Positions 127-63,687 of a DNA stretch of 64,000 bases are shown here, one piece after another; position 1 is the first letter of the stretch; each line of letters begins with the position of its first letter. The DNA comes from Macrostomum lignano (taxonomy: Eukaryota). The stretch spans positions 17,063 through 81,062 of the forward strand of contig NIVC01003714.1 in assembly GCA_002269645.1 (NCBI GenBank), in the 5' to 3' direction. The position numbers and the translations under genes were made by a program. Below the pieces are notes generated by a model. The model saw only the letters and a program-made list of their open reading frames with translations, did no database searches and was not told where the DNA came from.

Positions 127-3100
127 CAGGCAGTCGCGCACACGCAGCAGGAGGGCTTCCCGAGGCAGCAGCGCCAGTCGGGCGGCCGCCCCTCCGTCAG
201 CGGCGTTGACCAGAGCGGCCAGGGCGGCGGGCCGCAGAACGGACTCGGCGGGCAGGCAGGGGTCCAGCGAGGACTCCAGCAGCGGCAGCAGCTGCGGCCG
301 CGCCAACAGCAGGCGGTCGGCTCGGTCAGCTCCGCCAGCCAGCAGGTTGCGCAGCGCCTCCAGCGCTTTGCAGCAGGCGGCGGCGTCTGCGGTGGCGTCA
401 CCAGTTGCGATGGTCGCCGAAGGCTCCAGTTGGGTGCGCGGCAGCTGCAGCTCGTCCAGCATGGCGGCCAGGAGCTGCGGCAGTCGGTCGGCCAGCAGCT
501 GCCAAGCGGCGCTGTCGCCGCAGTCGTAGGCGGCGTTGGCCAGCGCCCAGGCCAGGCTCAGGCGGAGACTTCGCTGCCGGGTCGGCGCGGGCAGGCAGCA
601 GTCGGCCAGGAGGTTGAGCAGCAGCGACAGGCAGGACTCGGTGAGCAGGCGGTGGCGGCAGGGCGAGTGCGGCAGCAGCAGATTGCCGGTCAGGGCCACG
701 GCCGTCTCAGCCGATGCCGCAGCTCCGTCCTCGGCGACGGACCCGGCGTACCGTTGAAGGCATTCAAGGGCGAAGTCGGCCAGGCCGGGGTCGGCAAACA
801 GCTGCAGGAGGCTGTCGGCACAGCGGGACAGCGCGTGCAGCAGCAGCAGCAGCGCCGAGCGGAGACTGTCAGGCGGTGGCGGCTGCTGACTCGCCGAATT
901 CGGTAAAGTCGCCGCCGACGCGGTGGCAGTTGAGGAGAGCGCGGAGACCAGCTGCAGCAGCTGGGAGCGGAGCGGCACGCCGGGCTGCCTGGGCCACACG
1001 GGCGACAGCAGGGCGGCCAGGCGGAGCAGGCGGGGCAGCAGCGGCCGGCAAGCGGCCTCCGCCGGCAGCCGCTCCAGAAGGCCGTCAAGCAGCAGGCAGT
1101 CGCAGTGGGCGATGGAGTCCAGCGGGACACAGCCGGTCTGCAGCAGGAGTTGCATTTTGTATGAGCAGGATGAATATGGCGAGTAGAATGAATAGCAGTA
1201 TGACTATTAGTAAGAGCAGAAAGTATGACAAGCAGTGCGAGTAGCAGCACGAGCAGTAGTATGAGAAGTAGTATAAGCCGCTTATAAGAGCATTAGTATG
1301 AGAAGTAGTATAAGCCGCTTATAAGAGCATTAGTATGAGAAGTAGTATAAGCCGCTTATAAGAGCAGTAGTATGAGAAAAAAGTATGAGCATTAGAATGA
1401 GCAGTAGTACGGGTAGTAGTATGAGCAGGCAGTAGTATGAGCAGTAGTATTATGAGCAGCATGCATGTCACGGTTAGGGGATTAGCTCATGAGAATGGGA
1501 TTAGCTCATGAAAATGGGATGAGCTCATGAGAATGGGATTAGTTAATGAGAATGGGATTAGCTCATGAGAACGGGATTAGCTCATGAGAATGGGATTATC
1601 AATAGCAGCATGCATGTCACGGTCAGGGGATTAGCTCGTGAGAATGGGATTATCAATAGCAGCATGCATGTCACGGTCAGGGGATTAGCTCATGAGAATG
1701 GGATTATCAATAGCAGCATGCGTGTTACGGTTAGGGGATTAGCTCATGAGAATGGGATTAGCTCATGAGAATGGGATTATCAATAGCAGCATGCATGTCA
1801 CGGTCAGGGGATTAGCTCATGAGAATGGGATTATCAATAGCAGCATGCGTGTCACGGTCAGGGGATTAGCTCATGAGAATGGGATTATCAATAGCAGCAT
1901 GCATGTCACGGTCAGGGGATTAGCTCATGAGAATGGGATTATCAATAGCAGCATGCATGTCACGGTCAGGGGATTAGCTCATGAGAATGGGATTATCAAT
2001 AGCAGCATGCGTGTCACGGTCAGGGGATTAGCTCATGAGAATGGGATTATCAATAGCAGCATGCATGTCACGGTCAGGGGATTAGCTCATGAGAATGGGA
2101 TTATCAATGGCAGCATGTGTGTCACGGTCAGGGGATTAGCTCATGAGAATGGGATTATCAATAGCAGCATGCAAACCCAGCTGGCTGACTCACCCAGAAG
2201 ACAATGGCCAGGGTGTCCAGGCTGAGGCAGCGCCAGGCCAGCGGCACGGCCTCCGAGCGGCTCTGCACGCGGCGCACCGCGTCCGGCAGCACGCGATGAA
2301 GCAGAGCGTCCTGCAGGCGACTTCCGGCAGCACCGACGGCGGCGCGATGTCCAGCGGCGAGGGCAAGGCACATGCCAGCGAGGCAGCGAATCCCCGTGGA
2401 GCTGCGGAAAGGAGTCGGGGACGTCATAACATTGTGAGTAGTATTGGGCAGTGACGTCACCTGGATTGGAAACAGTACTGAATGGCCTATCATCGGCAGA
2501 ACGTTATGCATAATCAAGATTTCAAATAGATGACGTCATTGCCAATAGTGATTGGATTCCACTGACAAATTTAAAGATAAAAATATTCAATAGACGGCTG
2601 CGGGCACACTGACGCAACGCATTCGGCCACAACCAGCGCTGAGCACGCACAAAGTGCGCCAATACTGTAAACAGGCACGCACACAGTGTGTACAGCAACC
2701 CTGAATTTCTTATTGCTGGGCATGTACGAATCCCCATGGCACGACCCCAGAAGTCAAACGCGTCTACCGCTGAGCTGTTCCGCTCCCAATGCAAATATGA
2801 ATGAAAAGCTGGAGCAGCCAGAAGATCTCTGTGCTCACAATCTGGGCTGCAGCAGCTGGATGACTGTGTCCAGCAGTCTGCAGTCGGCTGTCCCGCCAGT
2901 CTCTTCTTCCAGAAGCCGGCCGGCAGCGTCGGGCACCCGCCAGCACAGCATGGCCAGCAGGCGCAGGCAGCTCAGCAGGTGGCCGCCATCGTCACGCCGT
3001 CGACGGCCGAAGCTCCTCTGCGGACGCGCGGGTCCGGCCAGCAGCAGCGGCGCCAGCGAGTCCACGGCGCCGTGGGCGTACAGGTGGAAGGCGGCGGCCT

Positions 3101-12702: not shown

Positions 12703-24004
<11,302 letters not shown>

Positions 24005-25650: not shown

Positions 25651-26045
25651 GTGTAAATATAAACTATATAAAAACTGTTGTTCGCTAACATTGGCTCTCG
25701 CTTCCTCTGTCAGTAGTAGTTTTATTAAAAACAAAACTATAATAAGTATATGGCTTTCCCTTGTATTATGCTTTGTCAAAATTTTTCCAAGTTTATTCGA
25801 CTAGCTCTATTATGTACTTGAGATTTCGTTCCTAAATACAAAACACACACCGAAAATGAAGATGTAAATATTAAAACATCGCATCAAAAACGTTGTCACT
25901 ATTGCCCAGTAAGATGTAATTTTCATTGTTTTTGAGTAAAAAATGATTGCGAAATTCTACGAATTGAAACTTTGATAATCAAATATACATTCCAATTGGG
26001 CGTTGAAGAGACTAAGGTTCAGTCTACGCACAGACAGACGCACAC

Positions 26046-27478
26046 TTGGCTTACATAATGGATTGGGGTGGAGCTTGGCGTACATAATGGATTGGGGTGG
26101 AGCTTGGCGTACATAATGGACTGGGGTGGAGCTTGGCGTACATAATGGATTGGGGTGGAGCTTGGCGTACATAATGGATTGGGTGGGGCTTGGCGTACAT
26201 AATGGATTGGGGTGGAGCTTGGCGTACATAATGGATTGGGGTGGAGCTTGGCGTACATAATGGATTGGGGTGGAGCTTGGCGTACATAATGGATTGGGTG
26301 GGGCTTGGCGTACATAATGGATTGGGGTGGAGCTTGGCGTACATAATGGATTGGGGTGGAGCTTGGCGTACATAATGGATTGGGGTGGAGCTTGGCGTAC
26401 ATAATGGATTGGGTGGGGCTTGGCGTACATAATGGATTGGGGTGGAGCTTGGCGTACATAATGGATTGGGGTGGAGCTTGGCGTACATAATGGATTGGGG
26501 TGGAGCTTGGCGTACATAATGGATTGGGGTGGGCTTGGCGTACATAATGGATTGGGGTGGAGCTTGGCGTACATAATGGATTGGGGTGGAGCTTGGCGTA
26601 CATAATGGATTGGGTGGGGCTTGGCGTACATAATGGATTGGGTGGAGCTTGGCGTACATAATGGATTGGGGTGGAGCTTGGCGTACATAATGGATTGGGT
26701 GGGGCTTGGCGTACATAATGGATTGGGGTGGAGCTTGGCGTACATAATGGATTGGGTGGGGCTTGGCGTACATAATGGATTGGGGTGGAGCTTGGCGTAC
26801 ATAATGGATTGGGTGGGGCTTGGCGTACATAATGGATTGGGGTGGAGCTTGGCGTACATAATGGATTGGGGTGGAGCTTGGCGTACATAATGGATTGGGT
26901 GGGGCTTGGCGTACATAATGGATTGGGGTGGAGCTTGGCGTACATAATGGATTGGGGTGGAGCTTGGCGTACATAATGGATTGGGGTGGGGCTTGGCGTA
27001 CATAATGGATTGGGTGGGGCTTGGCGTACATAATGGATTGGGGTGGAGCTTGGCGTACATAATGGATTGGGGTGGAGCTTGGCGTACATAATGGATTGGG
27101 TGGAGCTTGGCGTACATAATGGATTGGGGTGGGGCTTGGTGTACATAATGGATTGGGTGGGGCTTGGCGTACATAATGGATTGGGTGGGGCTTGGCGTAC
27201 ATAATGGATTGGGGTGGAGCTTGGCGTACATAATGGATTGGGTGGGGCTTGGCGTACATAATGGACTGGGGTGGAGCTTGGCGTACATAATGGATTGGGG
27301 TGGAGCTTGGCGTATATAATGGATTGGGTGGGGCTTGGCGTACATAATGGATTGGGTGGGGCTTGGCGTACATAATGGACTGGGGGTGGGGCTTGGCGTA
27401 CATAATGGATTGGGGTGGGGCTTGGTGTACATAATGAATTGGGGTGGGGCTTGGCGTACATAATGGATTAAGGTGGGG
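26046..27478. repeat. 28/29-bp G-rich minisatellite (GGCGTACATAATGGATTGGGGTGGAGCTT)n
   Basis: Visible ~1.4-kb array. Confidence 0.97.
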
Positions 27479-28455: not shown

Positions 28456-31112
28456 ATGCACGAAAAAAACAGTAGGACTGCAGAGCACACTTTGTTCTTG
28501 AAAGTGCGAGCCTCAACCCTTCTGCTGGCAGTTCTGTGCTGCCTCGCCCTGCGCCACTCCATGGCTGCCGAATTCGATCCTCTGGGCTGCTTATTCGACT
28601 TCTCGGAAGATGGGAGCCGCGACCTCAATGGCCTGGCGGGCTGGTCCAACGTCGGGTCCTACCCGGTGGGCGATAAGCACGTAGTCGTCGGCGACTTGAC
28701 TCTGAAACTGTGCAGCACAATCTTCGGCTACGGCAACTTCAAGTACTTCGGCGTCCAATTCCACATCGAATGCTATTGCGGCAACTCGTACGGCAGTTTT
28801 GGCGCGGCACCCGACGCCGACTGCTACGCCAAATGCGCTGGCAACCCCGCCCAGATGTGCGGAGGAGCAATGCGGATCTCCGTGTACCGCCAGATCTACC
28901 TGCGCTCCGGTGAGGCAACAGCTTGATTCCAGAATTTGGTGCAGTGCAGCGTTTAGGCCTACCTTGACCGACTATTCAAAAGCATTCGATATTAGTTAAT
29001 AGAATATTAGAAAATATCTCAGCAAGTTTGATGAAAATCGACTTTAGCTGTTTGTCCCTTCAACCAGCAATAAACTTGTGAAACCCTCAGACCAAGACAC
29101 CCTTCAACCAGCAATAAACTTGTGAAACCCTCAGACCAAGACACCCTTCAACCAGCAATAAACTTGTGAAACCCTCAGACCAAGACACCCTTCAACCAGC
29201 AATAAACTTGTGAAACCCTCAGACCAAGACACCCTTCAACCAGCAATAAACTTGTGAAACCCTCAGACCAAGACACCCTTCAACCAGCAATAAACTTGTG
29301 AAACCCTCAGACCAAGACACCCTTCAACCAGCAATAAACTTGTGAAACCCTCAGACCAAGACACCCTTCAACCAGCAATAAACTTGTGAAACCCTCAGAC
29401 CAAGACACCCTTCAACCAGCAATAAACTTGTGAAACCCTCAGACCAAGACACCCTTCAACCAGCAATAAACTTGTGAAACCCTCAGACCAAGACACCCTT
29501 CAACCAGCAATATACTTGTGAAACCCTCAGACCAAGACACCCTTCAACCAGCAATAAACTTGTGAAACCCTCAGACCAAGACACCCTTCAACCAGCAATA
29601 TACTTGTGAAACCCTCAGACCAAGACACCCTTCAACCAGCAATATACTTGTGAAACCCTCAGACCAAGACACCCTTCAACCAGCAATAAACTTGTGAAAC
29701 CCTCAGACCAAGACACCCTTCAATCAGCAATAAACTTGTGAAACCCTCAGACCAAGACACCCTTCAATCAGCAATAAACTTGTGAAACCCTCAGACCAAG
29801 ACACCCTTCAATCAGCAATAAACTTGTGAAACCCTCAGACCAAGACACCCTTCAACCAGCAATAAACTTGTGAAACCCTCAGACCAAGACACCCTTCAAC
29901 CAGCAATAAACTTGTGAAACCCTCAGACCAAGACACCCTTCAACCAGCAATAAACTTGTGAAACCCTCAGACCAAGACACCCTTCAATCAGCAATAAACT
30001 TGTGAAGCCCTCAGACCAAGACACCCTTCAACCAGCAATAAACTTGTGAAACCACCTCAGACCAAGACACCCTTCAACCAGCAATAAACTTGTGAAACCC
30101 TCAGACCAAGACACCCTTCAACCAGCAATAAACTTGTGAAACCCTCAGACCAAGACACCCTTCAACCAGCAATAAACTTGTGAAACCACCTCAGACCAAG
30201 ACACCCTTCAACCAGCAATAAACTTGTGAAACCCTCAGACCAAGACACCCTTCAACCAGCAATAAACTTGTGAAACCCTCAGACCAAGACACCCTTCAAT
30301 CAGCAATAAACTTGTGAAACCACCTCAGACCAAGGCACCCTTCAACCAGCAATAAACTTGTGAAACCCTCAGACCAAGACACCCTTCAACCAGCAATAAA
30401 CTTGTGAAACCCTCAGACCAAGACACCCTTCAACCAGCAATAAACTTGTGAAACCCTCAGACCAAGACACCCTTCAACCAGCAATAAACTTGTGAAACCC
30501 TCAGACCAAGACACCCTTCAACCAGCAATAAACTTGTGAAACCCTCAGACCAAGACACCCTTCAATCAGCAATAAACTTGTGAAACCCTCAGACCAAGAC
30601 ACCCTTCAACCAGCAATAAACTTGTGAAACCACCTCAGACCAAGACACCCTTCAACCAGCAATAAACTTGTGAAACCCCCAGACCAAGACACCCTTCAAC
30701 CAGCAATAAACTTGTGAAACCCTCAGACCAAGACACACGCTCGCTGCGAATAAACCGCTCCATACTTACACCAGATCAATAACACTGTATGCTTTCTCAG
30801 CGACATTGGGCCTGCAATTAGTTTTTATCGTTACTATCAGCGGAACTTCCAAGATCTCAACCGTGCAAATTTCCCTTGTTCCCGTGCAATGTGTTCACTC
30901 GGTCCGAAAAAGTCTACCTGAACGTAACATCCTCTAGTGGGCCCCTCTACCGGACCGTGCAGCCCGTGACGGACCTGACCGACTGCATACTCAGCTGCGG
31001 TGCCGACTGCCAGGCCGTGCTGTTCCACCTGGACGCCTGCTACCTGCTGAGACTGCCCGTTCTGCCGCACGAGCTACAGGACGTACCTGGGGAATTATTC
31101 CTTCGCGTGTGA
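28456..31112 (+). CDS. Small secreted WSC-domain protein with C-terminal PAN/Apple-like module
   Basis: Hydrophobic signal-like stretch (TLLLAVLCCLAL), then a WSC pattern LGC..D...RDL...LT.KLC...YFGVQ..ECYCG.SYG.FG.....C...CAGNP.QMCGG.MRISVY. Donor at 28910, in-phase acceptor at 30840, and a last exon with DC..SC..DCQAV.F....CYL ending TGA 31112. Start codon uncertain. Confidence 0.75.
29056..30737. repeat. 44-bp minisatellite in the WSC-gene intron
   Basis: (CCTTCAACCAGCAATAAACTTGTGAAACCCTCAGACCAAGACAC)n, highly homogeneous. Confidence 0.97.
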
Positions 31113-34268: not shown

Positions 34269-37200
34269 TCACCAGACGGTGCATTTTTTCACCGGGTTCA
34301 TCCGAGCCCCGGCCGGGCATTTAAAGACGCCACCAAAGTCGTGGTTGTTGCTGATAGGCCCCCACACCCGCATCTTGCCGGGCGGGTGCGGGTCCACCTT
34401 CGCCGACTGGCGCACCGACTCCTTGGTCTCCAGCTCGCACCAGGTCTGCGCGGCGATACAAAGGAGAAGTGAGAGATCGATTTAAACTACTGAGAAAAGT
34501 AGACAAATAAAGATTTGAAACGTAAAATCTTTCACAAAGCCCGATTATTCATCGCCATAAAAGAAACACCTGTGCACACTGAGAGAGGACGGCGTGTGGC
34601 AATGGCTGGCTGATAAAGACTGCTGAGCAAAGTTCGACCCTACTTTGAGTTTGTCACACGAAAAGGCCGCTTTGGGGCTAAGGGATTTTAGAAGTTAGGA
34701 CAATTCACTACAGGAAGTGAGAATCTTTGGGAAGCGGAGATCACGGGAATTCTGGGGAATTCGGAAATTCGGAAAGATTCGGAAATTAGGGACTATACTA
34801 TTTTGGGGATTCGGGAATTGGGGGTTCGGGAATTGGGGGTTCGGGAATTAGGGATTTGGAAATTGGGGATTCAGGAATTGGGGATTCGGGAATTAAAGAT
34901 TCGGGAATTGGAGATTAGGGAATTGGGGATTCGGGAATTGGAGATTAGGGAATTGGGGATTCGGGAATTGGAGATTAGGGAATTGGGGATTCGGGAATTG
35001 GAGATTAGGGAATTGGGGATTCGGGAATTGGAGATTAGGGAATTGGGGATTCGGGAATTGGAGATTAGGGAATTGGGGATTCGGGAATTGGAGATTAGGG
35101 AATTGGGGATTCGGGAATTGGAGATTAGGGAATTGGGGATTCGGGAATTGGAGATTAGGGAATTGGGGATTCGGGAATTGGAGATTAGGGAATTGGGGAT
35201 TCGGGAATTGGAGATTAGGGAATCAGGGATTCGGAAATTGGGGAATCGGGAATTGGAGATTAGGGAATTGGGAATTCGGGAATTGGAGATTAGGGAATTG
35301 GGGATTCGGGAATTGGAGATTAGGGAATCAGGGATTCGGAAATTGGGGAATCGGGAATTGGAGATTAGGGAATTGGGGAGCAGGGAGAAACTGAAAAGCA
35401 CGGCAGCTAAGAGATGTGAAATCTTGGGTGGGATAAAATCAAAGCTGGAGGCGGGACCAGCACAGTTGAACAAGGCAGCCTCATTAGGCTTAGAGCAGCG
35501 GGCCAGGATTCTCACCTGTGAGTAGGCGATGAATAGCAGCTGCTCTTTGGTGAATCGCTCGTTGAGGTTGGGCAGCAGGGGCTCCGGCAGCAGGTTTGCC
35601 CTGTCCTTGTAGGCCTGCGGAGTATCGAGGATGGGCGGAAAACTACTTGGGGATTTCGTTAAATTTCGCAAATTTTTTTTCCTTTCGATTACAAAAGCTG
35701 AAGGTAACCTCCTAAGGAACCGGCGCCAACACCAAAGTGCCCTCAGCAACCAATGCGAAACCGCTCACGCCACTCAGGATGCATATTTGCATAGCAACAG
35801 TCTCCAACCTGCACTTAATATTCTCTAACTTGCCCTAGTAACCGTCTCCGACATCTCCTAGAGCCGTCTCTAACATCCCCCCTAGCAACCGTCTCTAACA
35901 TTGCCATAATCCTAGCAACCGAATTCTCCATGCCCTAGCAACCAGATCATCCATACCCTAGCAACCGTATCTTCCATACCCTAGCAACCGTATCCTCCAT
36001 ACCCAAGCAACCGTATCCGTAATCCCCCAACAACCGTATCCGCAATCGTATAGCAACTTTATTCACAATTCCCTAGCAAACGTATCCACAATTCCCTAGC
36101 AACCGTCTCCAATATCCTCCTAGCAACCGTCTCTAACATTGCCATAACAACCGTTTTTAATAACTCTAGCAACCGTTATCCACTATGCCCTAGCAACCAT
36201 ATCCTAGCAACCATCATCCGCGCGCAGCTCACCCTGTAGGCGCTCTTCAGCCCGCCGTTGTCGGCGATGCTCTCGCCCAGCACGAGCTGCCCGGGCACCC
36301 GCACGTCGCCGTCAACCACGAAGTCCTCGTACTGCTTGGCGATGCAGGCGGCCGCTTCCTTGAAGGACTGGGCGGTGCGGTTGCTCCACCACTGCCGCTG
36401 GTTGCCGTTTCTGTCGAAGTTCTTGCCGTCGTCGTCGAAGCCGTGGGTGACCTCGTGGCCGATGACGGCCCCGATGGCGCCGTAGCTGATGTACGGCGGG
36501 AACTGCGCCTGGTAGAACGGGCGCTGCAGGATGCCGGCGGGGAAGGCGATCACGTTTGAGGAGGGCGAGTAGTAGGCGTTGATGGACTGCGGCGTCATTT
36601 CGAACTCGACCTTCACGGGTTCGGCCAGTTTGGCGATAGACTTCACGTGGCCGAGCCGCTGGATCTTCAGCAGGTTGTTGAAATATTCGCCGGATGCGAA
36701 CCGGAAGCTGCCGAATTCCTCGCGCATTGCCGTCTCGTTGCCGAAGTAGTCCGGGTAGCCGACCAGGTTGCGGATGCCCACCAGCTTCGCCATCGCCAGC
36801 CGCCTGGTGGTCGCGTCCATCCACGCCGCCTCCTGCAGGCTGCGGTTGAAGGCCGCCTTCACGTCGTTGATCATGGAGTTCACCGCCAGCTTCGACTCGT
36901 CGTCGAAGTGCTGATCGACGTACAGCTTGCCGAGCCCGAAGCCGAACATGCCGCTGACGGAGCGGACGCACAGAGCCCACGGGTTAGGCGAGCCGTGCAC
37001 GCCATCCGTGATGTGGTGCAGCTTGCGGGGAATGGCAGCGGCTTCCTTGTTGAGCACAGACAGGAAGATCCACACAGACCGGATGAGCAGGTAGTTGTTC
37101 ACGGTGCTGAGGTGGCGGTGCATGGGGGTTGCTCAGGTGTCGCTCAGACCCTGTGGGAGCTGCTCAGACCCAGTGGGAGCTGCTCAGACCCAGTGGGAGC

Positions 37201-48210: not shown

Positions 48211-50534
48211 TGTTTACAGACTGTCTGTAATGTGTGGCCCGGTTATGTTTACAGACTGTCTGTAATGTGTGGCCCGGTTATGTTTACAGACTGTCTGTAA
48301 TGTGTGGCCCGGTTATGTTTACAGACTGTCTGTAATGTGTGGCCCGGTTATGTTTACAGACTGTCTGTAATGTGTAGCCCGGTTATGTTTACAGACTGTC
48401 TGTAATGTGTGGCCCGGTTATGTTTACAGACTGTCTGTAATGTGCGGCCCGGTTATGTTTACAGACTGTCTGTAATGTGTGGCCCGGTTATGTTTACAGA
48501 CTGTCTGTAATGTGTGGCCCGGTTATGTTTACAGACTGTCTGTAATGTGTGGCCCGGTTATGTTTACAGACTGTCTGTAATGTGTGGCCCGGTTATGTTT
48601 ACAGACTGTCTGTAATGTGTAGCCCGGTTATGTTTACAGACTGTCTGTAATGTGTGGCCCGGTTATGTTTACAGACTGTCTGTAATGTGTAGCCCGGTTA
48701 TGTTTACAGACTGTCTGTAATGTGTGGCCCGGTTATGTTTACAGACTGTCTGTAATGTGTAGCCCGGTTATGTTTACAGACTGTCTGTAATGTGTGGCCC
48801 GGTTATGTTTACAGACTGTCTGTAATGTGTGGCCCGGTTATGTTTACAGACTGTCTGTAATGTGTGGCCCGGTTATGTTTACAGACTGTCTGTAATGTGT
48901 GGCCCGGTTATGTTTACAGACTGTCTGTAATGTGTGGCCCGGTTATGTTTACAGACTGTCTGTAATGTGTAGCCCGGTTATGTTTACAGACTGTCTGTAA
49001 TGTGTGGCCCGGTTATGTTTACAGACTGTCTGTAATGTGTAGCCCGGTTATGTTTACAGACTGTCTGTAATGTGTAGCCCGGTTATGTTTACAGACTGTC
49101 TGTAATGTGTGGCCCGGTTATGTTTACAGACTGTCTGTAATGTGTAGCCCGGTTATGTTTACAGACTGTCTGTAATGTGTGGCCCGGTTATGTTTACAGA
49201 CTGTCTGTAATGTGTGGCCCGGTTATGTTTACAGACTGTCTGTAATGTGTAGCCCGGTTATGTTTACAGACTGTCTGTAATGTGTGGCCCGGTTATGTTT
49301 ACAGACTGTCTGTAATGTGTGGCCCGGTTATGTTTACAGACTGTCTGTAATGTGTGGCCCGGTTATGTTTACAGACTGTCTGTAATGTGTGGCCCGGTTA
49401 TGTTTACAGACTGTCTGTAATGTGTGGCCCGGTTATGTTTACAGACTGTCTGTAATGTGTAGCCCGGTTATGTTTACAGACTGTCTGTAATGTGTGGCCC
49501 GGTTATGTTTACAGACTGTCTGTAATGTGTAGCCCGGTTATGTTTACAGACTGTCTGTAATGTGTAGCCCGGTTATGTTTACAGACTGTCTGTAATGTGT
49601 AGCCCGGTTATGTTTACAGACTGTCTGTAATGTGCGGCCTGGTTATGTTTACAGACTGTCTGTAATGTGTAGCCCGGTTATGTTTACAGACTGTCTGTAA
49701 TGTGCGGCCCGGTTATGTTTACAGACTGTCTGTAATGTGTGGCCCGGTTATGTTTACAGACTGTCTGTAATGTGTGGCCCGGTTATGTTTACAGACTGTC
49801 TGTAATGTGTAGTCCGGTTATGTTTACAGACTGTCTGTAATGTGTAGCCCGGTTATGTTTACAGACTGTCTGTAATGTGTGGCCCGGTTATGTTTACAGA
49901 CTGTCTGTAATGTGTAGCCCGGTTATGTTTACAGACTGTCTGTAATGTGTGGCCCGGTTATGTTTACAGACTGTCTGTAATGTGTAGCCCGGTTATGTTT
50001 ACAGACTGTCTGTAATGTGTGGCCCGGTTATGTTTACAGACTGTCTGTAATGTGTGGCCCGGTTATGTTTACAGACTGTCTGTAATGTGTGGCCCGGTTA
50101 TGTTTACAGACTGTCTGTAATGTGCGGCCTGGTTATGTTTACAGACTGTCTGTAATGTGTGGCCCGGTTATGTTTACAGACTGTCTGTAATGTGCGGCCT
50201 GGTTATGTTTACAGACTGTCTGTAATGTGCGGCCTGGTTATGTTTACAGACTGTCTGTAATGTGCGGCCTGGTTATGTTTACAGACTGTCTGTTATGTGC
50301 GGCCTGGTATGTTTACAGACTGTCTGTAATGTGTGGCTCGGTTATGTTTACAGACTGTCTGTAATGTGTAGCCCAATTATGTTTACAGACTGTCTGTAAT
50401 GTGCGGCCTGGTTATGTTTACAGACTGTCTGTAATGTGCGGCCTGGTTATGTTTACAGACTGTCTGTAATGTGTGGCCTGGTTATGTTTACAGACTGTCT
50501 GTAATGTGCGGCCTGGTTATGTTTACAGACTGTA
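48211..50534. repeat. 35-bp minisatellite with palindromic core, ~2.3 kb
   Basis: (TGTTTACAGACTGTCTGTAATGTGTGGCCCGGTTA)n starting a few bases after the NUDT19 stop. Confidence 0.97.
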
Positions 50535-52018: not shown

Positions 52019-56143
<4,125 letters not shown>

Positions 56144-57297
56144 CCTGCACGCTTGCTCACCCGATTGTATCAGAATTGAGTTTTTCTGCTTTTCCTATTA
56201 GCATGTCAATTTTGGCATGTCAGCCTAAGCTTCTTTTACTTTTTAAGCGTTTTTTAATTTAGTGTACATGCAATTATTTCAGGGTGTTATGAATTCTTTC
56301 TTAATTGTTCGCTTCTGTAGCCTATCCGTTAGTTTGGTTCTATTCATATTGTTTACATGTACATGCGAAAGCGGGTGGGATACTCATATGATGCAATAAT
56401 TCAATGAAATATACGTAGCTGGTTCTAACAATAATCATTGTGAGCACGAGATTCTATCAATAAAGAAATTTACTGAATGCATGTAAGAACCCTTTGTCCT
56501 ACAGATAATTGGCCGCATACATCAGAGTAAAACATTAAATCTTCAAGCAAAATATTTTATTGGCTGTAAAAGATGTTGTTCGATACTTTTTGTGCTAAAT
56601 TTACTATGAAGAATATTATAGAAATTAGATAGAGCTATCAGTTTATGTACATAAATGTACATCGACATGAACGAGCGTACATGTACATGTACGGAAGTAC
56701 AATCTATGGGATCCAACCGTGAATCAAGAGCCTGGCTTGTCAATTTGGCAGTGAATTTAACTGTAGAACTACCAGGATTCCGCCTGAACATTTTTCACTG
56801 CGCTTCTTGCCAGCCCTCTGGACCCCAGGGTAGTCCGAAGACACAGTGGAGAGGCGAGCGCCACCCATTCCGCTAGCCCTCTAGTCCCGTTGAGGTATTA
56901 AAAAATTCTGCCAGAAGGTCGGATTTTTCTCATACTCGTATATAAGCGCTATATATAGATCATCTACTCAATCCCAAGCAACAGGTACGCGCGTTTTACG
57001 CGCATTTTTTGGTAATTCTGTACGCGCGTAAGCGAACGCACAAAATACGCGCCTTTTGTAACAGAAAATACGCTGTAATAACGCAATGCTAACTGCAGAC
57101 TGGTACAGGAACAGGACTAACCATACATGTACATATATGTAGGTTCCGCGGATTCGTTTATTCATGCAAGCATACTTAATTGTCATAAGGCTTTAATTAC
57201 ATCGAATAACCCAGAAGGAACGTTAGCTGAGCCCATCTAAGGCTGAAGTGGCTTTTAGTAAATAAAGTATAGTGTCACGTTATTTGATGTTGGCCGT

Positions 57298-57313
57298 GAC
57301 CCTTAAAAGGGCC
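57298..57313 (-). other. Histone-mRNA-type 3' stem-loop (no histone CDS upstream)
   Basis: Minus strand AAAAC-GGCCCT-TTTA-AGGGTC-AC: 6-bp stem, 4-nt loop and flanks typical of replication-dependent histone 3' ends. Confidence 0.5.
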
Positions 57314-58026
57314 GTTTTAGTCCCAAAATAAGTTGAAGTCAACTTAGGCGAAGTGGTTGGTGTAGCGGAGCACTTGGCAATAAGGGCAGGAAACTGCCGT
57401 AGTCGTTTTTATTGTTTAAATCAATATAAATAGTAAGTTTGGTTGTTACTGGCAAATAACAAACTATGGCTTTCTGGGCACTGGCGGCTGCAACAATAGT
57501 TTCTTTTAAGATAAATTGGATGTGAGTTCAAGCGACAGACGAGTGATGTAATGTCGACGTAACGTGATGATCAATGGCAATGAGTACAGTGAAGGCAGTG
57601 AGGCGTAGTAGGCAGGCGGATGAGCAGTGGCGAAGTTGGCGTCAGTCGTGGCGTGAGGTAAGGAGGCTCGAGGCAGCCAGACAGAGAGAAGGAAAACAAG
57701 GCCGCAAAAACACACAAGGCCAAGGACAGACGGAGAGAGAGAGCGAGAGAGAGAGAGGAGAGAGAAAAGTGGAGTGCCCGCCGCCAGGCGGGGGGTTTAA
57801 TAAAGGAGCGCAGAGGGGGGTAGCGCGAAGCACGAGTGGTTTTCATTGGCTGGCGAGAGAACTTAAAATTATCGATCGTGCCAATTTTATACGGTCGCGA
57901 GAGAGGATAGCAAAATATACAGTGAATTAGAAATTGCCACAAAATCGTTGGGCACTACTACAAGTAAACGTCGCAATAAACGAATGGAAAAGTTTAGTTA
58001 AAACTATAGAGAAACAGCAGTCCAAC

Positions 58027-58042
58027 GGCCCTTTTCGGGACC
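58027..58042 (+). other. Histone-mRNA-type 3' stem-loop (no histone CDS upstream)
   Basis: CCAAC-GGCCCT-TTTC-GGGACC-ACC; one C.A mismatch and one U-G pair in the stem; consensus-like flanks. Confidence 0.45.
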
Positions 58043-60794
58043 ACCTTAAACTGGCAACGTCACACAACGTCACAACGGCAACATCACAGGCAAAATCAAT
58101 ACAAATATTGGTCAGTTTATGCATCAAAATGCTAGCTCGTAGGAACGTTGTCGAAAATGGAGTTCTGATAAATGAACTGCAATTTTTATTTATAAAAAAT
58201 AATTTAAGAACAAAGAGATACATAAGAGTGTAATGAAAGAGCAACTTAAATTAACGAGTGATTAAGCATAAAAGAAAAAGCCGCAAAAGCACACGAAAGT
58301 ATACCTGTTTACAATTCTGACCGAGTTGAAAAAAGTGAAAAGTAAAAGGATTTGGATTACCATTATTTTCAAACAAAAAGCAACTAAATCTAGTTAAATA
58401 AGTGCAGAATATAAATGTAAAACGGAAACAACAATAAAGCAATCCTTTTGTTTTTCAAAAGCTTTTGAGGCCATTTAAGCTTGAAATATATAAAATCCAA
58501 AGTGTATAATATATTTTAAAGTTATGAAAGCAACCAAATTAATGCATGATAAAGTGTATCATTAGCTATATCTTAAAATATCTCTATCTAGCTATAATCA
58601 ACTATCTAAATATAAGTCGTATAAAGCAAAGTAATCCATAAAACAAGTGTTGCATGCTCCAGATTACATGCAGTTTAATTGGCTTAAGTCTAACTAATGT
58701 TGACACGAAACACATGCTGAGTATGCTTTAAAAATAACTATTGAAAAGAATGGTTCTACTGTAACGGTAGGAAACAGAGAATAAAATAAAATACTAACAT
58801 ATTAACAAAAGCATGCGAACGCCTGTTGCTTGGGTATGGACTGCACTCCAGCTGTTGTAGTGATTTTTATACTTTCGCTGATCAAGCCTCGAGTTAAGTA
58901 CCACTAGGAACACTTCCTTATAGTCTAGTAGTACTGTCTAGTCTAGCTGTAGTCCTTGCCTCTAGTACAGTTGGGCGAAACCTCAACTGATGGAATCCTC
59001 AACTACAGCTGTACACTTAGTCTATAGCTCTCATGGTCATCACCTCGAAGCTGCCAATTCCTTCTAATATCAGCACAATTTACGAATAGTGTACTTGCTA
59101 TAAAATTATAGCAAGTATAAAGCAAAACTATAAAGCGAAAACACGTTTATATCGTTATAATGAACTCTCTGAACACTGCTTCATAGTTGCGCGCGATAAA
59201 TAAATAGAAGCTCGTCAATGTTTTGCAAAATTCTCAAAATTTTAGATCAAATTAAACTGAGTAACTTAAAGTATATCACACATGCGCCAAAACGTATAAA
59301 TTTGCTACAGCTGATAATTAAAAAACTCGTTTTGTTAAAATGAGTTAATGATGCTTCGTGTCTTGCATTTGAGTTAGGCAAATAACAGTGCCAAAACTCT
59401 GGCAGGTTCTATCAATCAATCAACTTTTTGTAGTTCTTTTGAGTCTTTGTTTTCTTCGTCAAGTTCATTGTGGGTTAGTCGGAGACTTCTCTCTTTCACC
59501 AAAAATTTATATTGAGCATCCATGGTAGCATTTTGACTTTCGTGAATATAATGTACTTTATATACTGCTTTAATGTTTCATCCTTCCTTCTAGCCAAAAT
59601 AGACAACAAGTTGCATAAAATCGTGTTGGAGTAAAGAACTTAAATTTATTTGAATAAAAAATGAAACATATGAAAGATTAAAAAATTCTATTATTCATTA
59701 ATTGACTTTTCCATTTTTATAAAAAAACAGCAGACAAAAATTTGTATTGAGTCTAGCTCGCAAAAATAATGTAATGAAATAGAAAATATGAAAATGAAAA
59801 AATATTGAAACATTATATATCAAAAAATATATCCTTCTTGATTTTTTCGATGAATTTCAAATCATACTTAGTTCACAAATATGGTTATATTTTTGGATTG
59901 TAAAGGATCTCAAATGCAGAATACCATTTTTATTGATCTTAAGGATGGTTACTGGTTAGTTTTTACATTAAATAGAAATTTTTTGTGCTAAATCGTAGGC
60001 TACAGGATATGATATTCATATTAATAATTATTACTTATTAATGTCACTCATGTGAATTTTCCATCCGAAATAGAGGGAAAAAGGACACTTCTCAAATATT
60101 AACAACGTAATAAAATTTTCATACTTTACTAATTCCATTTATTAAAATCTGCAATTGAATATAAAAATCATTGACGGTGATGATATGTTTTGTCAATTTT
60201 TAACTTTGCTAACTTTAGTCATTTAACATTAAGAATCTTATCTTATTAGTGACGATAAGAAAATAGTAGGTATAGTTTAGCTTTTCAAATATAAAAATGA
60301 ATAGTTCTGTTTTTTATAATCAAAAGACAGAAACTTTAACTAAAGTAAACTAAATTTAATTAAAAAAACTAAATAAACTAAAACTAGGCAAACAAATAAA
60401 CAAACACTAAAACTAAATGTTTTTATTTCATTTGAATATCCTTATATTTTTTGTATTTGAGTATGGCGCGAATTAAATGGGTGTGATGTCAATGCTTTTG
60501 GCACTTTTTAATAATCATAAAAGGCTAGTTAAAAGGCTAGTTAAAAGCATATATGGTGTCCAAAAGCATAGCTGAGTGTGAGTCCATGTTTCTGCTATTA
60601 TCTAGGCTTTATCAAGGTTTATGATTTCAAATTTTGATTTTACAAGGGGCTGGTAGTGGAGGATGTTGGCTGTTAATTCGATTGAGAAACGAACACTTGT
60701 TTAATGTTTATGGCTAAAAATAAGAATGAGAAACCCTGATTCACTATTAAGGCGTTAAATGATTAAAGATCGGGAAGATCACAGAGTGGGAGAT

Positions 60795-61432
60795 AACAGG
60801 GACGGGGAGATCACAGGGACGGGGAGATCACAGGGACGGGGAGATCACAGGGACGGGGAGATCACAGGGACGGGGAGATCACAGGGACGGGGAGATCACA
60901 GGGACGGGGAGATCACAGGGACGGGGAGATCACAGGGACGGGGAGATCACAGGGACGGGGAGATCACAGGGACGGGGAGATCACAGGGACGGGGAGATCA
61001 CAGGGACGGGGAGATCACAGGGACGGGGAGATCACAGGGACGGGGAGATCACAGGGACGGGGAGATCACAGGGACGGGGAGATCACAGGGACGGGGAGAT
61101 CACAGGGACGGGGAGATCACAGGGACGGGGAGATCACAGGGACGGGGAGATCACAGGGACGGGGAGATCACAGGGACGGGGAGATCACAGGGACGGGGAG
61201 ATCACAGGGACGGGGAGATCACAGGGACGGGGAGATCACAGGGACGGGGAGATCACAGGGACGGGGAGATCACAGGGACGGGGAGATCACAGGGACGGGG
61301 AGATCACAGGGACGGGGAGATCACAGGGACGGGGAGATCACAGGGACGGGGAGATCACAGGGACGGGGAGATCACAGGGACGGGGAGATCACAGGGACGG
61401 GGAGATCACAGGGACGGGGAGATCACAGGGAC
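60795..61432. repeat. 17-bp G-rich minisatellite (ACAGGGACGGGGAGATC)n
   Basis: Nearly perfect array. Confidence 0.97.
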
Positions 61433-62187
61433 GAGGATCTCGAGAAGTTCTCCGTGATCTCGGGAGATCACGAGAAGTTCGGGGAGCCAGAACAGGGAGA
61501 CCACAGTAAGATCGCAGGATCCAACAATGTTAAAAGCTGCTTATAACTTTTACTTTAACATTGGCCCAGTCTGCACGGCTCCCTGCTCGAAGTCAGCCAG
61601 AGGTGAACAAAGGAGACCAGCTGGGAGAGCTGCAGCCCAGATTCGGGCTGTCGTGCTCAAGCGCATTATGAAGCTGAAGTTTTTCAACTGATTCACCTGA
61701 GCGAATCTAATTGGAACTCAACTTGACAGTGAAGAATGCTCTGGGGTATCCAGAGTTGCAGTTTTTTTCATTCTTCACTTTTTTAAGCGAAGGAAAATCC
61801 GTCCTTGAAATGCATCGCCAACTTTTTCAACGGCCGGGTCTGGCTGTCAAATTCGCCACTTTCGAACCGCTTCTTCATGTCAATCCCGGATCACGCGACA
61901 CGATCGGAGACTCGGTTCCGCCTGGTTCTGGGCTAATTACCCTGTGATGGGGCTGGATGCCCTCAGCTTTACCGCCCCATCAGCAGCTCCCCCATTGGCT
62001 GGCGCACCCAGCATCTTCACTAGCTTCATCTGCCGCCGCTACCACCGCATTGGCCTCTACCGTTCGTGCTTCGTTTTTTTCTTTTGCAAGACAGAAGGCG
62101 CTGGGCCGGGTACATAAGGCGGCGGAGGCCCGCACCGGCTCGTCAGACACCTCCAGTCAGGCTGAACTCTGTCTGAATGTTTCACAG

Positions 62188-63687
62188 ATCCGACATGCTG
62201 CCGCCTCCTTCTTTGTTTCCGTTGATGTCGGAGTCTGCGGCCGCTGCCGCTTTTCTGTCTTCCCAGCGGCAGCGGCAGCAGAGGTTCCTGCCGCACTGCC
62301 ATCCCGTCAGGCAGCTGCTGGCCGCCGGTCTCCATGGCTGCCCGCCCGCCGGCCTCCCGCCGTTCTTGAGTCCATCGGCGGCCGCGGCCGCTGCGGCGAA
62401 TCTGCTGTCCTCAGCGTCGCCGCTGGCCCGGCTGCAGGGCCACTGCTTCCTGGCTGCCGTGAGTTCGCTGAAGGGCCGGCCTCTCCCCACAGATCGGAGG
62501 GAAGAGGCGAAGAGATGGAGATTAGAGAGAGAGAGATGGTTTCTCACGGACGAGGAAGCACGAATACTACTTGTAGTACGAGTAGATCGCAACTTGCATA
62601 GCAGATTATTTACGAGCCGTAGCATGCAAGTTTAAGTACATCATAGGAACAGGTCCATGCAGATAAGAGTCCGGTAGATCACAGAGTCAGGCAGATCACA
62701 GAGTCAGGCAGATCACAGAGTCAGGTAGATCACAGAGTCAGGCAGATCACAGAGTAGGTAAATCACAGAGTAGGTAGATCACAGAGTCGGGCAGATCACA
62801 GAGTCAGGCAGATCACAGAGTCGGGTAGATCACAGAGTCGGGTAGGTCACAAAGTCAGGCAGATCACAGAGTCAGGCAGATCACAGAGTCAGGCAGATCA
62901 CAGAGTCAGGCAGATCACAGAGTCAGGTAGATCACAGAGTCAGGCAGATCACAGGATTCAGGCAGATCACAGAGTCAGGCAGATCACAGAGTCGGGTAGA
63001 TCACAGAGTCGGGTAGGTCACAAAGTCAGGCAGATCACAGAGTCAGGCAGATCACAGAGTCAGGCAGATCACAGAGTCAGGCAGATCACAGAGTCGGGCA
63101 GATCACAGAGTCAGGCAGATCACAGAGTCAGGCAGATCACAGAGTCAGGCAGATCACAGAGTCGGGCAGATCACAGAGTCAGGCAGATCACAGAGTCAGG
63201 CAGATCACAGAGTCAGGCAGATCACAGAGTCAGGCAGATCACAGAGTCGGTTAGATCACAGGATAAATCAAAGAGTCTTTGAGATCGCAGGTTTAAATAA
63301 CGAATGAGTGATGGAGATGTGATAAAATTACAGAATTAAATCAAATTTGATTGTTAAATTTTCAATTCTGTTCATCTTCAATCGAATTCGGAATTGGACG
63401 CGGTGATGCGGTAAAAAACCGCCCTGTTCTGACATTGTGACAGCAGTTCCTTTCACTTTTCAGATGGGAGCCCAGTCTCCTCAACCGCTGGACTCCGTGG
63501 CCTACGGCGGCGCTCAGCATCATCAAGCGGCTGCTGCGGCCTCGTCTTCGGGGTCGGCCGGCGGCTCCCAGCAGCAGCAGCAGAGCCTGGCTTCCCAGCA
63601 GCGCGGCAGCCGACAGTCGCGCACGTTCGGCGAGAACATCGTCATCCTGCTGTGCATGAACCGCGTGCGCCGCATGGGCGGCCGCTG
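62188..63687 (+). CDS. Unidentified protein, Ala/Gln/Ser/Pro low-complexity exons followed by a conserved-looking block
   Basis: Candidate exons 62188-62458 (TTCACAG acceptor, GTGAGT donor) and 63464-63687 (TTTTCAG acceptor; GTACGG donor or read-through to TGA 63784) are in phase. GC3 is very high in RTFGENIVILLCMNRVRRMGGRW. Family not recognised. Confidence 0.5.
62675..63262. repeat. 17-bp minisatellite (AGATCACAGAGTCAGGC)n
   Basis: Visible. Confidence 0.95.

What the first reader, a model, noticed from the sequence alone, without database searches (positions are those of the whole stretch)
57290..58090. Hollow divergent histone-like unit: two outward-facing histone 3' stem-loops with no histone ORFs
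Seen: a - strand AAAAC GGCCCT TTTA AGGGTC AC (57298-57313) and a + strand CCAAC GGCCCT TTTC GGGACC ACC (58027-58042) point away from a central region with CCAAT (57845, 57880) and TATA-like (57796, 57885) motifs. Each follows a stop codon by ~25-35 nt and is followed by a shared ACGGC(C)AACATCA motif. No H1/H2A/H2B/H3/H4 peptide is found in any frame, and the - strand segment from 57780 to the loop has essentially no ATG. Established: this 16-nt stem-loop is otherwise specific to replication-dependent histone mRNAs (SLBP/U7 processing), and H2A/H2B pairs are often divergent. Inference: either a transposon-captured histone pair with its CDSs lost/replaced, or non-histone, non-polyadenylated RNAs that use the SLBP pathway for S-phase-coupled expression inside a mobile element.
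Basis: partly seen in the sequence, partly recalled or inferred. Interest (0 to 1): 0.7.

Follow-up and report, generated by a model that had tools for sequence, protein, structure and literature searches.

The report
Decayed inverted pair of histone-type hairpins
Two outward-facing hairpins that resemble the special 3' end of histone messenger RNAs really are there and are not a chance match, but both are damaged copies with no gene behind them, so the locus is most likely a dead relic rather than a working unit.

Summary
A - strand hairpin lies at 57298-57313 and a + strand hairpin at 58027-58042, pointing outward, with no histone coding sequence anywhere in the window. They are not a chance pair: they are the only two such sites in 64 kb. 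They also share a 45-52 nt inverted repeat covering the hairpin plus about 25-30 nt on its 3' side.

Neither is a good histone stem-loop. RF00032 scores are 23.5 and 17.7 bits against a gathering score of 34. Genuine sites that I fetched from metagenome contigs score 32-43 bits. Of 147 sites with the same 5' arm, 145 have a perfect stem; the window's two 3' arms occur 0 and 1 times. SL2 does not fold into the 6-bp/4-nt shape, and neither hairpin has a purine-rich downstream element.

I found no conserved ORF, no transposase remnant, no target-site duplication and no second copy. The mariner remnant lies 2.5 kb away.

Best reading: decayed remains of two histone-type 3'-end signals whose genes are gone, now inactive.

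By-product: in environmental eukaryote DNA, intact canonical histone stem-loops follow transposase genes of four DNA-transposon superfamilies.

The parts
57298..57313 (-). SL1: histone-type hairpin GGCCCT-TTTA-AGGGTC, with 5' flank AAAAC and 3' flank AC. It has five Watson-Crick pairs plus a G.U at stem pair 2.
   Evidence: sequence. RF00032 23.5 bits over 57273-57318, gathering score 34; folds as 6 bp/4 nt in isolation at -8.8 kcal/mol, against -11.5 for the perfect version, but not in its 76-nt context; the 3' arm AAGGGTC occurs in 0 of 147 natural sites.
57273..57295 (-). Block directly 3' of SL1 (GGCCAACATCAAATAACGTGACA), shared with the block after SL2. It is not purine-rich. Its GUGACAC can pair with the 3' arm of SL1.
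   Evidence: gapped inverted-repeat alignment scores 30.5 against a null of 17.4 +/- 2.3, with a maximum of 28 in 300 shuffles; 6 of 8 purines and no AAAGA-type core; competing structure.
58027..58042 (+). SL2: degenerate histone-type hairpin GGCCCT-TTTC-GGGACC, with 5' flank CCAAC and 3' flank ACC. It has a C.A mismatch at pair 3 and a U.G at pair 6.
   Evidence: RF00032 17.7 bits over 58022-58067; folds with a bulge and a 5-nt loop at -6.7 kcal/mol; in context the z-score is +0.84; the 3' arm CGGGACC occurs in 1 of 147 sites, and that one is on a 452-kb contig without a histone gene.
58053..58074 (+). Block 3' of SL2 (GGCAACGTCACACAACGTCACA). It is homologous to the SL1 block (18 of 22 identical), displaced by an 8-nt insert, and contains a tandem CAACGTCACA duplication.
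   Evidence: The two downstream flanks score 24 against each other, against 13.7 +/- 3.0 for SL2's flank versus 140+ real flanks.
57314..57780 (-). C+T-rich segment with no ATG between the central motifs and SL1. An AATAAA lies on the - strand about 135 nt beyond SL1, near 57160.
   Evidence: 0 ATG against 4.6 expected, and 15% G. (sequence).
57797..57892 (.). Central promoter-like cluster: TTTATTAAA on the - strand (57797-57805), CCAAT on the - strand (57845-57849), TATCGATC (57869-57876), CCAAT on the + strand (57881-57885) and TTTTATAC (57885-57892). These are short motifs and none is significant on its own.
   Evidence: direct reading. No statistical support beyond co-location.
57574..57930 (+). 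118-aa ATG ORF across the purine-rich centre. It is not a conserved protein and is most likely an artefact of the T-poor strand and the GA repeat.
   Evidence: no Pfam match; 0 relatives at E <= 0.001 among 1.84 billion representatives; not on record in any assembly.

Best explanation
The locus holds two decayed copies of a histone-type 3'-end processing signal: a stem-loop plus about 25-30 nt of its downstream flank. They sit in inverted, outward-facing orientation around 0.7 kb of non-coding DNA.

They descend from genuine signals of this kind. The source was either the 3' ends of a divergent histone pair, or the 3' ends of other genes that use this signal, such as the transposon genes I found in environmental DNA. 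A short inverted duplication of one such end is also possible.

The gene bodies are gone. Each hairpin has since picked up transitions in its 3' arm that genuine sites do not tolerate. Today the unit most probably does nothing through SLBP or U7. At most, the hairpins are weak structures in whatever transcripts the central CCAAT/TATA-like region may drive, and those transcripts would more plausibly end at the AATAAA beyond SL1.

Shown: the identity, orientation, degeneracy and relatedness of the hairpins, and the absence of any CDS. Inferred: descent from functional signals and present inactivity.
For: Non-chance and of histone type:
- These are the only two pattern or RF00032 hits in 64 kb.
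- SL1 is one substitution from AACGGCCCTTTTAAGGGCCAC and SL2 two substitutions from AACGGCCCTTTTCAGGGCCAC. Both 21-mers are used by real genes, at 50 and 95 of 147 sites.

Decay:
- RF00032 gives 23.5 and 17.7 bits against a gathering score of 34. Genuine sites give 33.8-42.9 bits next to histone genes and 32.3-41.8 bits next to transposase genes.
- 145 of 147 natural sites with this 5' arm have a perfect stem.
- SL2 misfolds, and SL1 is out-competed in context.
- There is no purine-rich HDE-like run: 6 of 8 and 5 of 8 purines and no core motif. Among genuine sites 62% have a run of at least 7 of 8 purines and 60% have a core motif. The HDE is defined as purine-rich and about 15 nt past the cleavage site (PMC5435866).

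Common origin limited to the signal:
- The inverted repeat starts 3 nt 5' of the stem and runs about 25-30 nt 3' of it. That is the footprint shared by different histone genes of one organism, for example the four genes of L021 and L028.

No gene:
- No histone CDS, no conserved ORF and no transposase remnant.
- The hairpins are 708 nt apart, against 997-1411 nt in real divergent pairs.
Against: - Point decay of about 10-20% in the hairpins should have left recognisable histone or transposase coding remnants, and none is seen. The gene bodies must therefore have gone by deletion, or were never there, and I cannot show which.
- All four differences between the hairpins fall in the loop and 3' arm, while the 12-mer AACGGCCCTTTT is identical in both. 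That hints at some constraint, or at a shared motif other than the hairpin.
- The ATG-free 467-nt - strand segment and the promoter-like centre would also fit a transcribed non-coding unit.
- HDEs vary between lineages. One environmental organism (sample Ga0080064) has a pyrimidine-rich conserved downstream element, so the lack of a purine run is weak evidence without this species' U7.
- I had no transcript data and no other genome of this lineage.
Confidence: 0.5

Rival explanations
1. It is a non-autonomous deletion derivative, or other remnant, of a DNA transposon whose gene or genes end in histone-type stem-loops. Internal deletion removed the coding part and kept both outward-facing 3' ends. 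Alternatively, the hairpin-bearing 45-52 nt inverted repeat is itself the terminal inverted repeat.
For: - Canonical stem-loops with HDE-like runs follow transposase ORFs by 14-33 nt. This is seen for Tc1/mariner-type (DDE_3), PIF/Harbinger (DDE_Tnp_4, plus a MADF protein from the same assembly), piggyBac and IS1595-like elements in metagenome contigs.
- In one Tc1/mariner-like family, the stem-loop is present in 5 of 8 lineages that I fetched by protein homology alone. It is perfectly kept there while the surrounding UTR has diverged.
- A two-gene element with outward 3' ends would give a hollow divergent pair once its interior was deleted.
- The window's pair is an inverted repeat.
Against: - No target-site duplication at any tested boundary.
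- No inverted repeat beyond about 30 nt outside the hairpins. In the complete environmental elements the stem-loop lies 50-120 nt inside TIRs of 130-210 nt.
- No second copy in the window.
- No transposase similarity in 55-60.5 kb.
- No DNA similarity to any of the 120 loci beyond the hairpin.
- The window's own mariner remnant has no stem-loop and lies 2.5 kb away.
Confidence: 0.2
2. It is a working bidirectional unit. The central CCAAT/TATA region drives two short non-coding RNAs whose 3' ends are made by SLBP/U7 at the two hairpins.
For: - The geometry matches that of real divergent histone pairs.
- CCAAT and TATA-like motifs face both ways.
- The - strand unit would be about 460 nt, the size of a histone mRNA, and is ATG-free.
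- The G at stem position 2, the only base read specifically by SLBP (PMC10388802), is kept in both hairpins.
- A 22-nt block is shared downstream of both.
Against: - Both scores are far below threshold and below every yardstick site.
- The stem defects are absent from 145 of 147 natural sites.
- SL2 does not form the required shape, and SL1 is out-competed in context.
- No purine-rich HDE is present, and the shared block sits at different distances from the two stems (0 and 8 nt). That is hard to reconcile with distance-dependent U7 cleavage.
- The + strand unit would be only about 100 nt long.
Confidence: 0.08
3. There is no histone ancestry at all. The pair is an ordinary short inverted repeat, for example a palindromic protein-binding site flanking a promoter or an old TIR, that resembles the histone hairpin by coincidence.
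For: - If the two copies arose by one inverted duplication, only one coincidence is needed.
- My loose grammar gives 0.21 sites per window by chance, so a large scan will meet look-alikes.
- The best-kept part is the 12-mer AACGGCCCTTTT rather than the pairing.
- The whole-window E-value of SL1 across all Rfam families is only 0.039.
Against: SL1 matches a naturally used 21-mer at 20 of 21 positions, flanks and loop included. From base frequencies alone (my arithmetic, not a tool result) that is expected about 3e-11 per position, well under one per gigabase. Genuine copies are abundant in genomes and are a far likelier source.
Confidence: 0.12

Closest known systems
3'-end processing signal of replication-dependent histone pre-mRNA (Rfam RF00032 stem-loop plus histone downstream element; SLBP and U7 snRNP)
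   Same: - 16-nt GGCCCU-UUUN-... hairpin with an A/C-rich 5' flank and an AC 3' flank.
- G at stem position 2.
- Loops UUUA and UUUC are natural variants.
   Different: - Stems are imperfect.
- Scores are 23.5 and 17.7 bits against a gathering score of 34.
- No purine-rich HDE.
- No histone CDS upstream.
- SL2 does not fold correctly.
Divergent histone gene pairs (H2A-H2B, H3-H4) sharing one promoter region
   Same: - Two outward-facing stem-loops.
- CCAAT and TATA-like motifs in the middle.
- Similarity between the two ends is limited to the processing signal.
   Different: - 708 nt between the hairpins, against 997-1411 nt in real pairs (L107, L026, L094).
- No coding sequence at all.
Histone orphons and pseudogenes (dispersed, decaying copies of histone repeat units; from general knowledge)
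   Same: An isolated location away from any histone cluster, with degenerate signals.
   Different: Orphons and pseudogenes keep recognisable coding sequence. Here only the two 3' signals are left.
Transposase genes with canonical histone stem-loops (seen here in metagenome contigs L023, L069, L080, L084, L049, L096, L056, L128-L136; no description found in the paper library)
   Same: A histone-type signal outside a histone gene. This is a possible source of orphan hairpins.
   Different: Those sites are intact (32-42 bits), follow a full transposase ORF by 14-33 nt, mostly have an HDE-like run, and sit inside elements with long TIRs. None of this holds for the window locus.
HDE-like motifs in human LTR12 elements and lincRNAs acted on by U7 snRNA (PMC11417402)
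   Same: A piece of the histone 3'-end machinery's recognition sequence found in repeats or non-coding units near CCAAT boxes.
   Different: There the motif is the U7-complementary HDE and acts on transcription through NF-Y. Here the motif is the stem-loop, and no HDE-like sequence is present.

Membership tests
Histone 3' stem-loop (RF00032) | Covariance-model score at or above the curated gathering score (34 bits) | tested here: not met
   The window hairpins score 23.5 and 17.7 bits. Genuine sites scored the same way give 32.3-42.9 bits.
Histone 3' stem-loop (RF00032) | Six uninterrupted base pairs closed by a 4-nt U-rich loop | tested here: not met
   SL1 has five Watson-Crick pairs plus a G.U and folds correctly only in isolation. 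SL2 has a C.A mismatch plus a U.G and folds with a bulge and a 5-nt loop. Of 147 natural sites with this 5' arm, 145 are perfect.
Histone 3' stem-loop (RF00032) | Guanine at the second stem position (G7), the base read by SLBP Arg181 (PMC10388802) | tested here: met
   Both hairpins start with GG. In SL1 this G pairs with U instead of C.
Histone pre-mRNA processing signal | Purine-rich histone downstream element about 15 nt past the cleavage site, complementary to the U7 5' end (PMC5435866) | tested here: inconclusive
   There is no purine run or AAAGA-type core within 35 nt of either hairpin. 62% and 60% of genuine sites have them. This species' U7 is unknown, and one environmental lineage uses a non-purine element.
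Histone pre-mRNA processing signal | Lies about 20-60 nt after the stop codon of a histone CDS | tested here: not met
   No histone similarity anywhere in the window (best E = 1.6). In the control loci the CDS ends 19-60 nt upstream of the hairpin.
Histone pre-mRNA processing signal | Non-polyadenylated transcripts ending 4-5 nt after the stem, coupled to S phase | not testable with these tools
   No expression data are available.
Divergent histone gene pair | Two histone genes transcribed outward from a shared promoter, about 1.0-1.4 kb between the stem-loops | tested here: not met
   708 nt between the hairpins and no CDS. Real pairs are 997, 1021 and 1411 nt apart.
TIR DNA transposon or MITE | Terminal inverted repeats at the element ends | tested here: inconclusive
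   A 45-52 nt imperfect inverted repeat exists (57273-57317 against 58024-58075). Nothing shows that it is terminal.
TIR DNA transposon or MITE | Target-site duplication flanking the TIRs | tested here: not met
   The scan of all boundaries from 57200-57300 by 58040-58200 gave only a 5-bp GTCAC repeat that lies inside a local tandem motif.
TIR DNA transposon or MITE | Multiple dispersed copies, with related autonomous copies carrying a transposase | tested here: inconclusive
   No second copy in the window, no transposase remnant nearby and no match in metagenome or viral contigs beyond the hairpin. The source genome itself could not be searched.
Stem-loop-terminated transposase gene (environmental elements seen here) | Full or decayed transposase ORF ending 14-33 nt before a canonical stem-loop | tested here: not met
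   tblastn with 111 ORFs taken from upstream of stem-loops hits only the mariner remnant at 54233-54674.

The most novel reading that the evidence does not exclude
The hollow pair is the stripped-down remnant of a mobile element, or of another non-histone unit, that used histone-type SLBP/U7-dependent 3' ends. It would then be a genomic fossil of a wider and apparently undescribed habit: DNA transposons coupling transposase expression to S phase by ending their mRNA in the histone stem-loop. I saw that habit in intact form in environmental Tc1/mariner-like, Harbinger, piggyBac and IS1595-like elements. A still bolder version is that the unit is alive and makes two SLBP-bound non-coding RNAs.
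Probability: 0.2. Interest if true: 0.7.

Novelty: new member of a known kind. Interest (0 to 1): 0.3.

Why it matters
By itself the locus matters little. It is most likely an orphan, decayed pair of histone-type 3' signals in a repeat-rich intergenic stretch.

It is useful as a caution. A sub-threshold RF00032 look-alike in a suggestive geometry is not evidence for SLBP-dependent RNAs.

The control set built to judge it matters more. [quoted passage not shown] Yet about half of the assessable intact canonical stem-loops in metagenome contigs follow non-histone ORFs, and at least 13 of 46 distinct ORFs are transposon proteins from four DNA-transposon superfamilies.

In one Tc1/mariner-like family the hairpin is kept perfectly while the neighbouring UTR diverges. 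If those mRNAs are really processed by SLBP/U7, cut-and-paste transposons would be tying transposase supply to DNA replication. That timing favours copy-number gain. The idea is directly testable.

Tried and rejected
- Histone remnants: tblastn with five histones at E up to 100 found nothing.
- A protein gene ending at SL2: the 118-aa ORF at 57574-57930 has no Pfam hit and no relative among 1.84 billion representatives.
- Source taxon and orthologous loci: the BTB exon gave no hit. The M13 peptidase exon gave only 40%-identical proteins from molluscs, a coral and a crab. Exact-ORF look-ups found nothing. No cross-species comparison of the locus was therefore possible.
- Other copies: self-blastn of the window, the metagenome scan and the viral scan found no homologue beyond the 21-nt hairpin.
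- TIR or TSD boundaries: none were convincing. A perfect 13-nt inverted repeat at 56973-56985 and 58822-58834 is about what chance gives in 3.5 kb and is not centred on the pair.
- Similarity of the downstream blocks to real histone 3' flanks: none stands out.
- Other RNA families and tRNAs: none.
- From memory only, and not tested: the 31-bp terminal repeat of the Drosophila P element contains TAAGGTGGTCCCG, the reverse complement of window 58037-58049. The rest of that repeat does not align and the left arm has the wrong polarity, so I treat it as coincidence.
- Literature: five searches found no paper linking transposases or non-histone genes with the histone stem-loop.
- The first whole-window repeat finder was swamped by microsatellites and was useless.


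Full report
WHAT IS THERE. On the - strand, AAAAC-GGCCCT-TTTA-AGGGTC-AC has its 16-nt stem-loop at 57298-57313. On the + strand, CCAAC-GGCCCT-TTTC-GGGACC-ACC has its stem-loop at 58027-58042. The two point away from each other and lie 708-714 nt apart. Between them are a CCAAT on each strand (57845-57849 on -, 57881-57885 on +), two TATA-like runs (57797-57805, 57885-57892) and a TATCGATC. A C+T-rich - strand stretch from 57780 to 57314 has no ATG at all, where 4.6 are expected; 1.3% of shuffles also have none, and the strand is only 15% G.

IS IT MORE THAN CHANCE. Yes.
- A degenerate histone stem-loop pattern finds only these two sites in 64 kb, against 0.26 expected.
- A looser grammar of my own finds the same two, against 0.21 expected.
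- They are the only two RF00032 matches in the window at any E-value up to 10.
- SL1 differs at one position from AACGGCCCTTTTAAGGGCCAC and SL2 at two from AACGGCCCTTTTCAGGGCCAC. Real genes use both 21-mers.
- The two sites are also related to each other. A gapped alignment of the left flank against the reverse complement of the right flank gives an inverted repeat of 45-52 nt. It scores 30.5 against a null of 17.4 +/- 2.3, with a maximum of 28 in 300 shuffles.
- That repeat begins 3 nt 5' of the stem and runs about 25-30 nt 3' of it. It includes a 22-nt block (GGCCAACATCAAATAACGTGACA against GGC-AACGTCACACAACGTCACA) that starts 0 nt after the CAC of SL1 and 8 nt after the CAC of SL2.

ARE THEY GOOD HISTONE STEM-LOOPS. 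No.
- RF00032 gives 23.5 and 17.7 bits; the gathering score is 34.
- As a yardstick I scanned public metagenome contigs for AACGGCCCTTTTMRGGRYCAC. This pattern leaves the two stem positions that are changed in the window free to vary. Of 147 sites, 95 have the 3' arm CAGGGCC and 50 have AAGGGCC, all perfect stems. The window's AAGGGTC occurs 0 times. CGGGACC occurs once, on a 452-kb contig with no histone gene.
- Genuine sites score 33.8-42.9 bits behind histone genes and 32.3-41.8 bits behind transposase genes.
- SL1 folds into the 6-bp/4-nt shape only in isolation, at -8.8 kcal/mol against -11.5 for the perfect version. In its 76-nt context its 3' arm pairs with the downstream GUGACAC instead.
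- SL2 folds with a bulge and a 5-nt loop, and in context is no more stable than shuffled sequence.
- The histone downstream element is defined as a purine-rich sequence about 15 nt past the cleavage site that pairs with U7 (PMC5435866). Within 35 nt, 62% of genuine sites have a run of at least 7 of 8 purines and 60% have an AAAGA-type core. The background figures are 34% and 15%. The window sites have 6 of 8 and 5 of 8 purines and no core.
- The one base that SLBP reads specifically, the second G of the stem (PMC10388802), is kept in both.

WHAT LIES BEHIND THEM. Nothing recognisable.
- tblastn with H1, H2A, H2B, H3 and H4 finds nothing better than E = 1.6 in the whole window.
- Real divergent pairs in the control loci have their stem-loops 997-1411 nt apart, with the CDS ending 19-60 nt before the hairpin. 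Here 708 nt could not hold two histone genes.
- The 118-aa ATG ORF on the purine-rich + strand (57574-57930) has no Pfam match and no relative among 1.84 billion representatives.
- The locus is not inside a detectable mobile element. The only TIR-bounded element is an internally deleted mariner at 53981-54756, with 37-bp TIRs and HTH_48 and Transposase_1 fragments. It lies 2.5 kb to the left.
- I found no target-site duplication, no longer inverted repeat, no second copy and no transposase remnant near the pair.
- The neighbourhood is an intergenic stretch between a BTB/BACK gene (exons 52708-53934) and tandem arrays. The window as a whole is packed with minisatellites.

A BY-PRODUCT THAT CHANGES THE PRIORS. 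106 intact canonical stem-loops in the control set had at least 700 nt of upstream sequence. Only 53 of them follow a histone CDS.
- The rest follow other ORFs. Among 46 distinct ORFs, Pfam finds DDE_3 (Tc1/mariner type) in 8, DDE_Tnp_4 (PIF/Harbinger) in 2, piggyBac DDE_Tnp_1_7 in 1, IS1595-like in 1 and MADF in 1. It also finds GDSL, P2RX7_C, C2H2, RING and Tpt1 domains.
- The transposase stop codon lies 14-33 nt before the hairpin, and most have an HDE-like purine run.
- Several contigs are complete elements with TIRs of 130-210 nt, with the stem-loop between the gene and the right TIR.
- To remove the ascertainment bias of the pattern search, I fetched relatives of one transposase (L023; 894 relatives at E <= 1e-20, all on unnamed contigs of 1.3-2.3 kb) by protein identity alone. 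Five of eight lineages, 61-72% identical in protein, carry a canonical stem-loop after the stop at 32.3-41.8 bits. The flanking UTR has diverged beyond alignment. Three lineages have none.
- At the DNA level, then, the histone stem-loop is not specific to histone genes, and some DNA transposons appear to keep it under selection. I found no paper describing this. The hosts are unknown.

EXPLANATION. The best-supported reading (confidence 0.5) is that the two hairpins are decayed descendants of genuine histone-type 3'-end signals. They came from a divergent histone pair, from other genes that use the signal, or from a short inverted duplication of one such end. The gene bodies are gone and the hairpins are now inactive.
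- For this reading: the near-identity to naturally used 21-mers, the similarity footprint confined to the processing signal, the stem defects that natural sites do not show, the missing HDE and the missing genes.
- The weak point: point decay of this size should have left coding remnants, so the bodies must have been deleted or were never there.
- A transposon-remnant version (0.2) gains plausibility from the by-product but lacks a TSD, longer TIRs, other copies and a transposase trace.
- A live SLBP/U7-processed pair of non-coding RNAs (0.08) fits the geometry, the ATG-free leader and the kept G7. It conflicts with the scores, the folds, the absent HDE and the unequal spacing of the shared block.
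- Pure coincidence (0.12) needs a 20-of-21 match to a natural signal.

COMPARISON AND NOVELTY. The locus works like nothing in particular. It resembles the 3' ends of a divergent histone pair with the genes removed. It fails the membership tests for a functional RF00032 site (score, stem, CDS position), for a histone pair (CDS, spacing) and for a transposon (TSD, copies). I file it as another orphan, decayed instance of a known signal. Interest is low to moderate for the locus itself. The transposase-linked stem-loops in environmental DNA are the more interesting lead and are listed under things noticed in passing.

LIMITS. I had no transcript data, no access to the source genome or close relatives, and no taxon assignment beyond an invertebrate-like metazoan. 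The best protein match for the M13 peptidase exon is 40% identical. This species' U7 and real histone 3' ends are therefore unknown.

Noticed in passing
Loci L023, L069, L072, L080, L084, L105, L003, L066, L083 (DDE_3); L049, L119 (DDE_Tnp_4); L112 (MADF); L096 (piggyBac); L056, L070 (IS1595-like): Intact canonical histone stem-loops (RF00032 about 34-41 bits), mostly with an HDE-like purine run, lie 14-121 nt after the stop codons of transposase genes. The genes come from four DNA-transposon superfamilies in soil and marine metagenome contigs. Several contigs are complete elements with TIRs of 130-210 nt. I found no description in the paper library.
   Followed up: partly
Loci L128, L129, L131, L133-L136 (stem-loop present) against L121, L122-L127, L137 (absent): These relatives of the L023 transposase were fetched by protein identity alone. 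Five of eight lineages keep a perfect or near-perfect stem-loop 20-33 nt after the stop, while the rest of the 3' UTR has diverged. This suggests selection on the hairpin in part of the family. The hosts are unknown and all contigs are unnamed.
   Followed up: partly
Loci L018, L022, L031, L039-L041, L054, L059, L078, L085, L087, L104 (all from sample Ga0080064) and L044: In one sample, many cysteine-rich, Pfam-less ORFs end in a canonical stem-loop. It is followed by a conserved, non-purine element (consensus about ACWTCTTTACTACATT). This may be a lineage with a different U7 target and wide non-histone use of the signal.
   Followed up: no
L096 about 1214-1375 (- strand); also L071, L092, L105: There are tandem arrays of two to four histone stem-loops behind one gene. 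In L096 the gene is a piggyBac transposase.
   Followed up: no
window 53981-54756: An internally deleted mariner-like element with 37-bp TIRs that are 89% complementary (53981-54015 and 54720-54756). It retains HTH_48 and Transposase_1 fragments and sits just after the BTB/BACK gene. It has no stem-loop.
   Followed up: yes
window 1-64000 (for example 14176-15500, 26045-27476, 29056-30736, 48211-50533): The window is unusually dense in distinct minisatellite and microsatellite arrays: 68 TRF rows at score >= 150, including (AGAC)n x331, a 29-mer x50, a 44-mer x38 and a 35-mer x66. Many of the long 'ORFs' and the GC swings are products of these arrays.
   Followed up: partly
window 60788-61437 and 62666-63261: Two arrays with a 17-nt period (38 and 35 copies). 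blastn aligns 60761-61242 to 62777-63262 at about 77% identity. The first reads through as a 232-aa repeat 'protein' that is almost certainly not a gene.
   Followed up: no
window 36176-37120 (-) and 52708-53934 (+): Real coding exons: an M13 (neprilysin/ECE-type) peptidase exon of 314 aa, and BTB plus BACK domain exons with a poly-Q/His tract. The peptidase's best database relatives are only 40% identical (gastropods, a coral, a crab). The source lineage is therefore poorly represented in the databases.
   Followed up: partly
window 57314-57780 (- strand), and AATAAA near 57160: A 467-nt C+T-rich stretch without a single ATG lies downstream of CCAAT/TATA-like motifs, and a polyadenylation hexamer lies about 135 nt beyond SL1. 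This would fit a 5' leader or a polyadenylated non-coding transcript unrelated to the hairpins.
   Followed up: partly
window 18041-18145: The best Rfam E-value in the window (mir-6132, 36.6 bits against a gathering score of 112) falls on a CAG/CTG-rich tandem repeat and is not a credible microRNA.
   Followed up: no
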